Below, piece by piece: positions 26,187 to 60,215 of a stretch of DNA of 64,000 bases. This DNA is from Octopus bimaculoides (Eukaryota): the NCBI RefSeq assembly GCF_001194135.2, contig NC_068982.1, forward strand, positions 149,412,055-149,476,054, in the 5' to 3' direction. Position numbers and translations under genes: made by a program. The notes under the pieces were generated by a model. It was not told the origin of the DNA, ran no database searches, and saw nothing but the letters and a program-made list of their open reading frames with translations. Position 1 is the stretch's first letter. Every line of letters begins with the position of its first letter.

Positions 26187-26379
26187 AATGGGTTTTCTGA
26201 TAATTTTTCCACTTTAATAATTAGATGTTTCCAAGTTTACAAAAGGTCACTCTAATAGGAGTTTCTCGCTTAAAAGCAGTTTGAAAACTGCTTTTCTTTT
26301 AAGCAAAAAACTCCTACCAGAGTCATCTTTTGTGAACTTATAGGCATCTAATTATTAAAGTAGTGGTATGCAAGAGAGA

Positions 26380-33339: not shown

Positions 33340-33960
33340 AAGAAAAAATACATCGCTTCTGTGATGTCAACATACATACACACGTACAAAATACACACAC
33401 ATATAATGAATATCCTGGTGTGTCAATCGACACAAACACACGTCCACTATCTGTGACATATACACACATAGTCTTCGGGCTCTCTAAGATAAAAGAACAT
33501 CGACTTTTTGACATACACAATATTTTAATCATTTAGAAATATTTTCAACTGAATGGGATTTCAAAAATGTAAGTTGTTTGTAAAGTAAGTATTTATATTT
33601 TAGCTTTCTTTAAACAGACAATAGTTTAATGTTTTTTTTTAATTATTTTCAAGTGAATGGCAATCTTTCGCTTATCATCCGGAGTTTATTAATTTCCATA
33701 AAAAATTCTTATTTATTTACTTTTTTTTAAGTGAAAGAGAGGAGAAAGTGGAAGATGTATGTACATGTATATGAAATGGATGTGTGTGTGTGAAAGAGAG
33801 AGAGAAAAAAAGTTAGAGAGTGAGTGAAGGGGTATGTTGTCATGTATACGTACATACATCAATACATAACCGTACATCTTTTTTGTATGTACGTGTGCAT
33901 GTGTGTGTGAGTGACAGAGTGCGTGACTGAACGTGTGTGTTCTCATGTATGTGTAAGTGG

Positions 33961-34010: not shown

Positions 34011-34083
<73 letters not shown>

Positions 34084-34564
34084 TACACACGTCCATTTCA
34101 TATACATGTTCATACATCTTTTACTTTCTCCTCTTTCACTTTAAAACAAAAGTAAATAAACATAAATTTTTACAGAAATTAATGAACAAAACCAGCTGAT
34201 CCAGATGACAGTTCTGAGAGTCAAAGCGAAGGATTGCCCCAGGGGAATACCATTACAGAAGATTTTTCGAGTGCATTCAACGTATCTCAGCTCCAAAGAT
34301 TTGGTTACTTTTTCTAGCACACCCTGCTACCACATAACAGTTATTTGCGATGAAGGACCCAAAATACCTGTTACATGGTAGCAGGGCATGCAAGAAATAG
34401 CAGACAAGTCTTTCCTTTTCTGGGGAAAGGAACCGTTTACACGTGATTTCGATGTCACATTAATTGAAAGCATGTGAAATAACCTGGAAAAGAAAAAACC
34501 CACGAAACAAAACTCTGTTGCTGAGTAATTCAAACTTTCCAGCTGACCCAACAGGTCATGGGTA

Positions 34565-35802: not shown

Positions 35803-35879
35803 AATTAGTATGTATAGTGCTCAGGTACACTATGACTAATCAAAGGTGCATGTACTGTACATAGAATTATATACAAAAG

Positions 35880-36485
35880 TCAGTGTATGAGCCATGATAT
35901 ACATGTGTGCATCCGTATGGAGGGGGGATATCAAGTGTAGTGTTGGTGAATTTCAGGAAGGATGGAGGATTTAAAGGATGCAATGTCTTGGCAACTAACA
36001 CCTGTTGTAGTTTGTTCCATGCTTCAGCAACTTTGAGTGCTAAAAAATGTTTTTGAAAGTCATGGGAGTTTTCCTGTTTTCTGACTTTGTAGGCATGCCC
36101 ACATGTGTTAGATATATGGAGCTCAAAAAGGTGCTTAGTGTGGTTGTTGGTGCAATGGTTAATAATTTTTTCGGTGTTTACCAAGTCAGTTGCCAGATGT
36201 CAGAGCTTCAATGTATCTATGCCCAGGGAAGCAAGGCGTTCAGAGTATGGTAGATTTCTGATGGAGGGTGTTTGCTTGGTTGCACGTCTCTGAACAGTTT
36301 CCAGGAGGTCAATGTCCTGAGCAAGACAGGGGTTCCAGACTGGTGATGCAAACTTCAAATGTGGTCACATCATAGCAATATACCGCCTTAAATAGATAGC
36401 CGAGAGTGAGTGACAAAGGTTTTGCTGAGTGATGCCAAGTCACCCTCGGCCTTCTTGACAATTTTAGAGATGTGCTTTGTCCAGC
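35880..36485 (-). mobile_element. CR1-clade LINE ORF2 C-terminal fossil
   Basis: PHLKFASPVWNPCLAQDIDLLETVQRRATK..YSERLASLGIDTL..GHAYKVRKQ..KHFLALKVAEAWNKL. Confidence 0.9.
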
Positions 36486-58084: not shown

Positions 58085-58890
58085 ATAGAGGGGAAGGAGT
58101 CCACATAACCACACCCAGATCAACCAGGGCCCTCTGACAGGACCCTTCTCTTTGCTAAATGAAATGATGTCGGTCCCAGAACAGCTGCCAGGTATCTCCA
58201 CAAACTTGGTTACTGTGGCAGAGCAGCAAGAGGGAAGCCACTTCTTTGACCAGCCAACATCAAGCAGAGAAAAGATTGAGCCAGTGAGATGGTGGAGAGG
58301 CCACTAGCATTTTGGGACCCTGTCATATTCTCTGATGAGTCCAGATTTCCTGACAGTGATCAAGTGTGGGTCTGGACACTCTGTGATCAAGAATTTGATG
58401 TTAAAAGATTGCAGCTAACAATGAAACATGGCAACTATTCTCTGAGGGTCTGGAGAACAATTTGGAGCAAGGGTTGATCAGAGCTGGTGGAGTGTGAGGG
58501 AACCAAACTCAGATAAATATGTGTCCACATTGCAAAAAGGACGCCTTCCAATCTTCTCCAGTGGTGAAATGATTAAAGAAGAGTCTTTATTTATGGAAGA
58601 AGGGGTTCCTTGTTACATGGCTAAAATGACCCAAGATTTGTTGGATGAGAATGGCATTAAAAAGCTTCCAAGGCCAAGCCAGTCTCCAGATATGAACCCT
58701 ATTGAACACCTCTGGGACATAATGGACAGAACACTTCATAAAAAGAACAAGAAAGCTTCTTCAAAGTCAGATCTTTTGAGATTATTGCATGAAACTTGGC
58801 AAGAAATTCCGTTAGTGAATATTTGTCATCTCTCTGATCAGTAACATGCCTAATAGGGTCCTTGCATTGAAAAATGCAAAGGGCATGTCT
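58085..58890 (+). mobile_element. Tc1 (DD34E) transposase fossil
   Basis: KLGYCGRAARGKPLL..VIFSDESRF..FMEEGVPCY..SQSPDMNPIEHLW..MSTKY*, with stops and frameshifts. Confidence 0.9.
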
Positions 58891-59564: not shown

Positions 59565-60215
59565 GAAGCTGGCAGAACTGGTAGCACTCTGGACAAAATG
59601 CTTAGCAACATTTCATCTGTCTTCGTGTTCTGGGTTCAAATTCTGCCTAAGTCAACTTTGCCTTACATCTTTTTATTTACCCTTGAAAAAATGAAAGGCA
59701 GAGTCAACATTGGTGGAAATTGAACTCAGAACATGAAGTCTGATGAAATGCCGCTAAGCATTTCAAATTCCACTAACGCCAGTATCGGCTATTGCCAGTA
59801 CCATCTGACTGGCCGTTGCCAGTACTGCCTGACAGGCCGTTGCCAGTACCACCTGACTGGCCTTTGTGCCGGTGGCATGTAAAAGCACCCACTACACTCT
59901 CAGAGTGGTTGGCATTAGGAAGGGCATCCAGCTATAGAAACTCTGCCAAATCAGATTGGAGCCTGGTGTAGCCATCTGGATCGCCAGTCCTCAGTCAAAT
60001 CGTCCAACCCATGCTAGCATGGAAAGCGGACGTTAAACGATGATGATGATGATGATGATGATGATTGACTTTGCCTTTCATTCTTTCAAGGGTAATAGAA
60101 AGGTGAAAGGCAAAGTTGACCTCAGCAGAATTTGAACTCAGAATGTGAAGATGGATGAAATGTCATCAAGCACTTTCTCTAGTGTACTAGCAACTCTGTT
60201 AACTTGCTGCCTAAA
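59565..60215. mobile_element. Cluster: inverted pair of partial family A SINEs, RTE 3' end (59770-60063, plus) and a further family A fragment (minus)
   Basis: Homology to 3118-3329 in both orientations. The RTE terminus carries (GAT)n. Confidence 0.75.

What the first reader, a model, noticed from the sequence alone, without database searches (positions are those of the whole stretch)
34311..34397. Candidate uncharacterised microRNA hairpin on the minus strand
Seen: the minus strand folds into a ~36-bp stem with only 2 mismatches. Four positions are G:U on minus but A-C mismatches on plus, which points to selection on the minus-strand RNA. An ~11-bp lower stem, ~25-bp upper stem and ~15-nt loop match Drosha substrate geometry (established). 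It lies in unique, CpG-retaining DNA just downstream of a strong minus-strand acceptor at 34484. Inference: 5p is ~CCUGCUACCAUGUAACAGGUAU and 3p is ~UAACUGUUAUGUGGUAGCAGGG. I do not recognise the seed, and coleoids are reported to have many lineage-specific miRNAs. I found no CNNC motif at the expected spacing.
Basis: partly seen in the sequence, partly recalled or inferred. Interest (0 to 1): 0.75.

Follow-up and report, generated by a model that had tools for sequence, protein, structure and literature searches.

The report
Palindromic hairpin; microRNA status unproven
A real 119-base DNA palindrome folds into a microRNA-sized hairpin, but similar palindromes are common in this stretch and no available data show expression or conservation, so it is most likely an ordinary inverted repeat that could at best be a young or proto-microRNA.

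Summary
The hairpin exists as described. The minus-strand RNA folds at -50.5 kcal/mol (z -10), against -37.7 for the plus strand. The stem has 36 pairs with 2 mismatches and a 15-nt loop, and four G:U pairs become A-C mismatches on the plus strand. It is the inner part of an ungapped 119-nt palindrome (34295-34413). The four wobbles form two TG/CA doublets, so they are probably four ancestral CpGs that all mutated C>T on the minus strand.

The microRNA reading is possible but unsupported:
- There is no Rfam family, CNNC or basal UG motif.
- None of 18 candidate seed matches appears in the held part of the published octopus miRNA target tables.
- No orthologous sequence or small-RNA data could be reached.
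- The same 64 kb holds at least two other hairpins of comparable quality, one clear TA-flanked MITE and a repeat-family hairpin pair, so the base rate is high.
- The strand asymmetry is weak statistically (6:2 overall). Another palindrome here shows it too, and local TG exceeds CA on the minus strand.

Best reading: an old inverted repeat that decayed neutrally (0.5). Rivals are part of a repeat family (0.25) and a genuine unannotated miRNA (0.15). Small-RNA read mapping and a genome-wide copy count would decide.

The parts
34295..34413 (.). Whole ungapped palindrome (59 positions on each side of the axis at 34354). It has 43 Watson-Crick pairs, 6 wobble pairs if the minus strand is the RNA, 2 if the plus strand is, and 8 other mismatches. 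It ends abruptly at 34294/34414.
34311..34397 (-). The hairpin as flagged: a 36-position stem with 2 mismatches and a 15-nt loop. Minus-strand RNA -50.5 kcal/mol.
34368..34391 (-). 5' arm of the 24-bp uninterrupted core (GCAUGCCCUGCUACCAUGUAACAG).
34317..34340 (-). 3' arm of the 24-bp core (CUGUUAUGUGGUAGCAGGGUGUGC). It starts with U at the weakly paired A/U-rich end.
34347..34361 (-). Apical loop, 15 nt. It contains the only CpG left in the palindrome.
34320..34321 (-). First wobble doublet, pairing with 34387-34388. It reads TG on the minus strand in both arms, so a palindromic CpG step is inferred as the ancestor.
   Evidence: inference
34333..34334 (-). Second wobble doublet, pairing with 34374-34375, with the same TG/TG pattern.
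   Evidence: inference
34484..34503 (-). Acceptor-like motif (pyrimidine tract + CAG|G, AG at 34485-34484), 71 nt upstream of the palindrome on the minus strand. Whether it is used is unknown.

Best explanation
The feature is an old DNA palindrome of about 119 bp. It was made in one step by an inverted duplication or a replication template switch, with little or no spacer. It has since decayed by point mutation to 73% Watson-Crick pairing.

The inner 36 positions happen to be the best preserved part. Their only changes are four C>T transitions at two palindromic CpG steps. These read as G:U in a minus-strand RNA and as A-C in a plus-strand RNA.

The result is a hairpin with the size and stability of a microRNA precursor, but it is not shown to be a gene. 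If a transcript crosses it on the minus strand, Drosha and Dicer could process it. It is therefore best described as a neutral inverted repeat, or a proto-miRNA.

Shown: the palindrome, its extent, the mismatch pattern, and the local abundance of similar hairpins. Inferred: its origin by one event, the ancestral CpGs, and neutrality.
For: - The palindrome reaches well beyond any Drosha-relevant stem. Positions 44-59 from the axis still pair at 11 of 16 in the register fixed by the core (binomial about 3e-4, my calculation). It then stops abruptly. This is what a DNA-level duplication predicts.
- The window CpG o/e is 0.29 and the palindrome's is 0.21, so loss of four CpGs is the expected mutation.
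- The clean 24-bp run is not unusual given the number of helix-breaking mismatches. Permutation gives p=0.13 for the stem alone and 0.03 with the loop included.
- Comparable hairpins are common here. Three loci in about 60 kb have an uninterrupted helix of >=18 bp in complex sequence with a loop of <=40 nt. Further long palindromes lie at 16941-17060, 59621-59738 and 60065-60120, with energies of -46 to -59 kcal/mol.
- Strand asymmetries of 6-13 kcal/mol also occur in most of those. The 26-kb palindrome has 4 of 4 core wobbles on the minus strand too.
- Local TG exceeds CA 39:24 on the minus strand, which suggests a mutational strand bias.
- Published base rates: over 6,000 suitable template-switch hairpins gave at least 18 miRNA genes in primates (PMC10710096). 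There are 164 miRNA genes in Octopus vulgaris (PMC9699675).
- No Rfam family, no CNNC and no listed seed.
Against: - All six wobble-type mismatches within 48 positions of the axis favour the minus-strand RNA. That is two-sided 1/32, but the boundary was chosen after seeing the data.
- All four CpGs decayed while none of the 40 other core bases changed. This is mildly unlikely under neutrality (best-case likelihood about 0.05, my calculation).
- Stem length (36), loop (15 nt), a 5' U and a weakly paired 5' end for the 3p candidate all match a productive precursor.
- It is single copy in the window, has no target-site duplication, and its flanks retain CpG.
- An acceptor-like motif lies 71 nt upstream on the same strand.
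- The species was not identified, so absence from the octopus tables may not apply.
Confidence: 0.5

Rival explanations
1. It is a genuine canonical microRNA gene transcribed from the minus strand, either lineage-specific or not yet annotated. Drosha would cut about 11-13 bp above the basal junction. Dicer would release a duplex of roughly 34364-34385 (5p) and 34322-34343 (3p). The 3p strand (UAACUGUUAUGUGG...) would be the likely guide, because it starts with U at the less stable end.
For: - Fold of -50.5 kcal/mol, z -10, the best non-repetitive hairpin in the window.
- A 36-position stem and a 15-nt loop.
- Pair probability >=0.98 in longer context.
- Wobble orientation 6:0 for the minus strand within the stem.
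- Single copy in the window and no TSD.
- An acceptor-like motif upstream on the same strand.
- Octopuses gained 90 novel miRNA families, and the authors call their count an underestimate.
Against: - No expression or conservation evidence of any kind.
- No Rfam family.
- No CNNC within 30 nt, and no UG at -14 for the proposed cut (sequence).
- None of 18 seed-match heptamers, covering 8 start registers of the 3p arm and 10 of the 5p arm, occurs in the miRNA-labelled target table of Zolotarov et al. The held rows are in mixed order, and 5,085 further rows of the 8-mer sheet were cut when the file was stored. TAACAGTA is explicitly labelled a non-seed k-mer.
- High local base rate of similar hairpins.
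- The statistical case for RNA-level selection is weak.
Confidence: 0.15
2. It is one copy of a dispersed repeat: a foldback or MITE-like element, or an internal hairpin of a SINE/LINE. The imperfect pairing would then reflect the family consensus rather than decay in place. The relative CpG richness of the flanks would reflect a fairly recent insertion.
For: - The window is dense in mobile elements. There is a 118-bp element with 30-bp perfect terminal inverted repeats and a TA duplication at 16940-17057.
- Two related hairpins lie at 59621-59738 and 60065-60120.
- A Tc1-like DDE_3 remnant lies at 58446-58841.
- A 111-nt inverted repeat lies 100 nt away.
- Segments with high CpG o/e elsewhere in the window coincide with repeated SINE-like ORF motifs.
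Against: - No second copy in 64 kb at up to 3 mismatches in 22 nt, or by word-9 BLAST.
- No target-site duplication of >=3 bp at any boundary from 36 to 63 positions from the axis, and no TA flanks.
- Both metagenome scans for the arms were empty, though that collection probably holds no DNA of this organism.
Confidence: 0.25
3. It is a double-stranded RNA element of another kind within a longer minus-strand transcript. It could be an endogenous siRNA-producing hairpin, or a duplex that recruits ADAR editing, which is very active in coleoids.
For: - A 24-bp perfect duplex inside a 36-41-bp helix. This is more perfect than most conserved miRNA precursors (my own knowledge).
- The four wobble sites could also be read as A>G changes at UA steps.
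Against: There is no evidence of transcription. The CpG explanation of the wobbles is simpler, given a window CpG o/e of 0.29. Nothing here is specific to this reading.
Confidence: 0.07

Closest known systems
Canonical animal microRNA precursors, in particular the 90 novel cephalopod, coleoid and Octopus families of Zolotarov et al. 2022 (PMC9699675; MirGeneDB)
   Same: Stem of about 35 bp, a 15-nt loop, very stable fold, single copy locally, and a candidate guide with a 5' U.
   Different: No reads, no conservation data, no CNNC or basal UG. The duplex is more perfect than usual. The candidate seeds are absent from the held part of the published target tables.
Hairpins created by replication template switching (Monttinen et al. 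2023, PMC10710096)
   Same: Perfect or near-perfect pairing of a whole hairpin that one mutational event can explain. Such hairpins are the raw material from which a small minority become miRNA genes (over 6,000 hairpins, at least 18 genes).
   Different: The event cannot be reconstructed here without outgroup sequences. This palindrome is long (119 nt) and old (27% of pairs mismatched).
MITEs with TA target-site duplication, such as the 118-bp element at 16940-17057 in this window
   Same: Similar total length. Folds into a long hairpin on either strand.
   Different: That element pairs only in its 30-bp termini and has TA flanks. The candidate pairs along its whole length, has no TSD and has no second copy in the window.
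Rfam mir-5444 (RF03511), the best Rfam match
   Same: A long unbranched hairpin of about 90 nt.
   Different: 40.3 bits against a gathering score of 90. The plus strand also scores 29.5. The aligned letters agree mostly through pairing, not sequence. It is not a member.

Membership tests
Canonical animal microRNA (MirGeneDB-style criteria) | Unbranched hairpin with at least 16 complementary positions between the arms and a loop of at least 8 nt | tested here: met
   36 positions with 2 mismatches and a 15-nt loop
Canonical animal microRNA (MirGeneDB-style criteria) | Reads of 20-26 nt from both arms, with 2-nt 3' overhangs and uniform 5' ends | not testable with these tools
   No small-RNA data are reachable
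Canonical animal microRNA (MirGeneDB-style criteria) | Conservation of the arms in related species, with pair-preserving change | not testable with these tools
   The ORF look-up, protein search and two metagenome scans found no related DNA
Canonical animal microRNA (MirGeneDB-style criteria) | Not a dispersed repeat | tested here: inconclusive
   Single copy in 64 kb. The genome-wide count is unknown.
Canonical animal microRNA (supporting, not defining) | Processing motifs: CNNC 16-18 nt downstream, basal UG at -14, apical UGU | tested here: not met
No CNNC within 30 nt of three candidate 3p ends.
Any described RNA family (Rfam 15) | Score at or above the family's gathering threshold | tested here: not met
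   No match in the whole window. The best sub-threshold hit is mir-5444, 40.3 against 90 bits.
Annotated Octopus miRNAs (Zolotarov et al. 2022) | Seed match listed in the published miRNA target tables | tested here: not met
   18 heptamers for both arms are absent from the miRNA-labelled table. TAACAGTA is labelled non-seed. Caveats: the stored files are truncated and the species of the window is unverified.
MITE / foldback transposon | Target-site duplication flanking terminal inverted repeats | tested here: not met
   No direct repeat of >=3 bp at boundaries 36-63 from the axis. The flanks are CC/CC, not TA.
MITE / foldback transposon | Many dispersed copies | tested here: inconclusive
   None in the window. 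The genome is not available.
Mirtron | Hairpin ends coincide with a GU 5' splice site and an AG 3' splice site | tested here: not met
   The stem begins UUUCUUGCAUG. There is no consensus donor at the 5' base and no pyrimidine tract before the 3' base.

The most novel reading that the evidence does not exclude
This is an unannotated, lineage-specific microRNA caught soon after its birth from a DNA palindrome. A single inverted-duplication or template-switch event made the hairpin. A minus-strand transcript, perhaps one using the acceptor at 34484, exposes it to Drosha and Dicer. Selection on the RNA would then explain why all four CpG decays in the duplex went in the direction that keeps G:U pairs.
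Probability: 0.15. Interest if true: 0.4.

Novelty: new member of a known kind. Interest (0 to 1): 0.2.

Why it matters
If it were a real microRNA, it would add one locus to the large cephalopod miRNA expansion. It would also be a clear example of a miRNA born from a palindrome, with its CpG decay filtered by RNA pairing. That is useful but incremental.

As it stands, the main value is a caution. In this repeat-rich genome, pri-miRNA-like hairpins occur about every 20 kb. G:U strand asymmetry also arises without selection. Structure alone therefore cannot nominate miRNAs here.

Tried and rejected
Steps that led nowhere:
- Exact look-up of the 105-aa spurious ORF across the hairpin, to fish for contigs of the same or related species: not on record.
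- Protein search with that ORF: no hit.
- Two metagenome scans, one with both arms and a variable loop and one with a 28-nt degenerate arm: both empty.
- Full-text searches for 16-21-nt pieces of either arm in RNA or DNA letters: no paper.
- Search for papers that list Obi-/Ovu- miRNA names: none relevant.
- Supplements of Zolotarov et al.: they hold seed-match k-mers but no mature sequences, and the files are truncated.
- Identifying the organism with the Tc1-like ORF: only unnamed ENA proteins at 47-69% identity. The coleoid premise stays unverified.
- Hunt for a host-gene exon. The six-frame ORFs are dominated by microsatellite and repeat translations. Pfam found only a sub-threshold DDE_3 in eight chosen ORFs. 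No anchor for orthologous loci was found.

Readings rejected:
- Chance hairpin: expected about 3e-4 per window.
- Mirtron: no splice sites at the ends.
- snoRNA snR8: 19.5 bits, E=0.15.
- tRNA-related: none found.
- Coding exon after the acceptor: only one open frame, with no homologue.
- A donor at AAAAA|GTAACC at the hairpin base: weak, lacking the -1 G and +5 G.

Full report
THE OBSERVATION

The minus strand of 34311-34397 folds into one unbranched hairpin at -50.5 kcal/mol. Two hundred dinucleotide-preserving shuffles average -20.6, giving z = -10.0, and none folds as well. The plus strand folds at -37.7, z -7.1.

Pairing is ungapped around an axis at 34354. From the loop outward there is:
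- a 15-nt loop;
- five A/U pairs;
- a G:A mismatch;
- 24 uninterrupted pairs;
- a U:U mismatch;
- five more pairs.

The four positions that are G:U on minus and A-C on plus are 34320/34388, 34321/34387, 34333/34375 and 34334/34374. The core helix keeps pair probabilities of at least 0.98 when 300 or 500 nt of context are folded. The arm sequence occurs nowhere else in the window at up to 3 mismatches, or by word-9 BLAST. No CNNC lies within 30 nt downstream of three possible 3p ends.

WHAT THE HAIRPIN IS PART OF

The pairing does not stop at the flagged ends. In the same ungapped register it runs out to 59 positions on each side (34295-34413) and then stops abruptly, with five consecutive non-matches. 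Of the 59 pairs, 43 are Watson-Crick. Six are wobble if the minus strand is the RNA, two if the plus strand is, and eight are other mismatches.

The outermost 16 positions still pair at 11 of 16. At 25% per position this has a probability of about 3e-4 (my calculation). So the object is a 119-nt DNA palindrome, not only an RNA-sized stem.

No direct repeat of 3 bp or more flanks it at any plausible boundary, and the flanks are CC/CC rather than TA.

ORIGIN OF THE WOBBLE PAIRS

The four G:U pairs sit in two adjacent doublets. In each doublet both arms read TG on the minus strand. The simplest ancestor is a palindromic CpG step in each place: CACG paired with CGTG. All four CpGs would then have undergone C>T on the minus strand.

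The alternative is two adjacent transitions in one arm at each doublet. It needs the same number of changes but not at hypermutable sites.

The window is strongly CpG-depleted (o/e 0.29). The palindrome itself is at 0.21, while its immediate flanks are at 0.54 and 0.68. So 'CpG-retaining' holds for the flanks only.

IS THERE EVIDENCE OF SELECTION ON A MINUS-STRAND RNA?

It is suggestive but weak.
- Orientation. Four of four CpG decays in the wobble-preserving direction is 1/16 one-sided. Counting every transition-type mismatch gives 6:2 for the whole palindrome. It gives 6:0 within 48 positions of the axis, but that boundary was chosen after seeing the data.
- Control. The palindrome at 26240-26335 has a 28-bp uninterrupted helix on the minus strand, and its four core wobbles also all favour minus. 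Overall it is 6:5.
- Other hairpins. The long hairpins in the window show strand differences of about 3 to 13 kcal/mol, against 12.8 for the candidate.
- Local bias. On the minus strand between 34110 and 34550, TG outnumbers CA 39 to 24. A mutational strand bias could therefore contribute.
- The clean run. The 24-bp run is not exceptional given the number of helix-breaking mismatches. Permutation gives 0.13 for the stem alone and 0.03 with the loop included.
- Rates. All four CpGs decayed and none of 40 other core bases changed. Under a neutral model with CpG transitions 15 times faster, the best-case likelihood is about 0.05 (my calculation). This is mildly unusual, no more.

BASE RATE

I folded 11,784 windows of 100 nt, at steps of 10 on both strands. 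The mean is -16.3 kcal/mol with sd 7.8. The candidate is third overall and first among windows that are not microsatellite. But it is not alone.
- A census of uninterrupted helices of at least 18 bp, in complex sequence with a loop of at most 40 nt, finds three loci in about 60 kb: 26286 (28 bp), the candidate (24 bp) and 4423 (20 bp).
- Further long hairpins lie at 16941-17060, 59621-59738 and 60065-120.
- The one at 16940-17057 has 30-bp perfect terminal inverted repeats flanked by TA on both sides. That is the signature of a Tc1/mariner-type MITE.

If one such hairpin per 20 kb is typical of a genome of a few gigabases (genome size from my own knowledge), there are on the order of 100,000 of them. 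Against that, 164 miRNA genes are annotated in O. vulgaris and 162 in O. bimaculoides, after small-RNA sequencing of 18 O. vulgaris tissues and a whole-body O. bimaculoides library (PMC9699675). In primates, more than 6,000 suitable template-switch hairpins yielded at least 18 miRNA genes (PMC10710096). The prior for any single hairpin is therefore well under 1%. The features in its favour have to overcome that.

COMPARISON WITH WHAT IS KNOWN

No Rfam family reaches its gathering score anywhere in the window. With permissive settings the best match is mir-5444, at 40.3 bits against a cut-off of 90. The plus strand also scores 29.5. This is a generic long-hairpin match.

The supplements of Zolotarov et al. 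that are held do not contain mature sequences. They do list the seed-match k-mers of the annotated miRNAs. I tested 18 heptamers, covering eight start registers of the 3p arm and ten of the 5p arm. None occurs in the miRNA-labelled table. TAACAGTA is explicitly labelled a non-seed k-mer.

The rows seen are in mixed order, so this argues fairly well that the hairpin is not among the annotated O. vulgaris miRNAs. There are two caveats. The stored files are truncated. And I could not verify the species: a Tc1-like ORF found only unnamed proteins at 47-69% identity.

WHAT COULD NOT BE DONE

No cephalopod genome, transcriptome or small-RNA data can be reached with these tools. The following attempts all failed:
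- fishing for related contigs through the spurious ORF across the hairpin;
- DNA pattern scans of the metagenome collection;
- full-text searches for the arm sequences.

I found no convincing protein-coding exon within 10 kb that could anchor orthologous loci. The only open frame after the acceptor-like motif at 34484 has no homologue. That motif has 12 of 15 pyrimidines followed by CAG|G. Nine motifs at least as good lie on the minus strand of the window and two on the plus strand.

VERDICT

The hairpin is real and non-random, and it has the dimensions of a Drosha/Dicer substrate. My estimates are:
- 0.5: an old inverted repeat made by one DNA-level event and decaying neutrally. Its best-preserved inner part looks like a miRNA precursor.
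- 0.25: a copy of a repeat family. This cannot be excluded without the genome.
- 0.15: a genuine, unannotated, probably lineage-specific miRNA.
- 0.07: another kind of double-stranded RNA element.

Mapping small-RNA reads and counting genomic copies would settle the matter quickly. Interest is low to moderate. At best it is one more member of a known class, with a neat origin story.

Noticed in passing
window 16940-17057: A 118-bp MITE-like element with 30-bp perfect terminal inverted repeats (AATTCTCAAATGCAGGATAATGCTAATAAT and its reverse complement). It is flanked by TA on both sides. It folds at -56 to -59 kcal/mol on either strand.
   Followed up: partly
window 26240-26335: A second long palindrome in complex sequence. 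As minus-strand RNA it has a 28-bp uninterrupted helix (-57.3 against -49.5 kcal/mol). Its four core wobble pairs also all favour the minus strand. It is as good a hairpin as the flagged one but has a short loop of about 4 nt.
   Followed up: partly
window 59621-59738 and 60065-60120: Two related hairpins share a GACTTTGCCTTTCA...TGAAAGGCAAAGTTGAC core, so they are probably copies of one repeat family. The first folds at -59.4 kcal/mol on the plus strand.
   Followed up: no
window 33684-33792 and 34080-34187: A 111-nt inverted repeat, 86% identical. Its roughly 290-nt spacer is full of microsatellites and holds a 10-N gap. It lies only about 100 nt from the candidate palindrome and may be a foldback element.
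   Followed up: no
window 58446-58841 (and 1421-2007): Transposase remnants. The first matches Pfam DDE_3 at 26.2 bits (cut-off 28.6) and Tc1-like proteins at 47-69% identity. The second looks mariner-like by eye but has no Pfam hit.
   Followed up: partly
window 35870-36199, minus strand: This ORF contains a motif (...FLALKVAEAWNKLQQVLV...) that resembles the C-terminal tail of CR1/RTE-type LINE ORF2 proteins. The resemblance is from memory and there was no Pfam hit. It lies 1.5 kb upstream of the hairpin on the same strand.
   Followed up: partly
whole window: Acceptor-like motifs (>=12 of 15 pyrimidines + NCAG|G) number 9 on the minus strand and 2 on the plus strand, or 22 against 4 at >=11 of 15. 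This could reflect a minus-strand transcription unit or only compositional skew.
   Followed up: no
whole window: There is strong CpG depletion (o/e 0.29), with islands of 0.6-0.7 at 12-13 kb, 25-26 kb, 32-35 kb and 53-54 kb. Some of these coincide with a repeated SINE-like unit whose translation reads ...LDALPNANHSESVVGAF..., seen at least 8 times. The window also has twelve N gaps totalling 3,812 bases.
   Followed up: no
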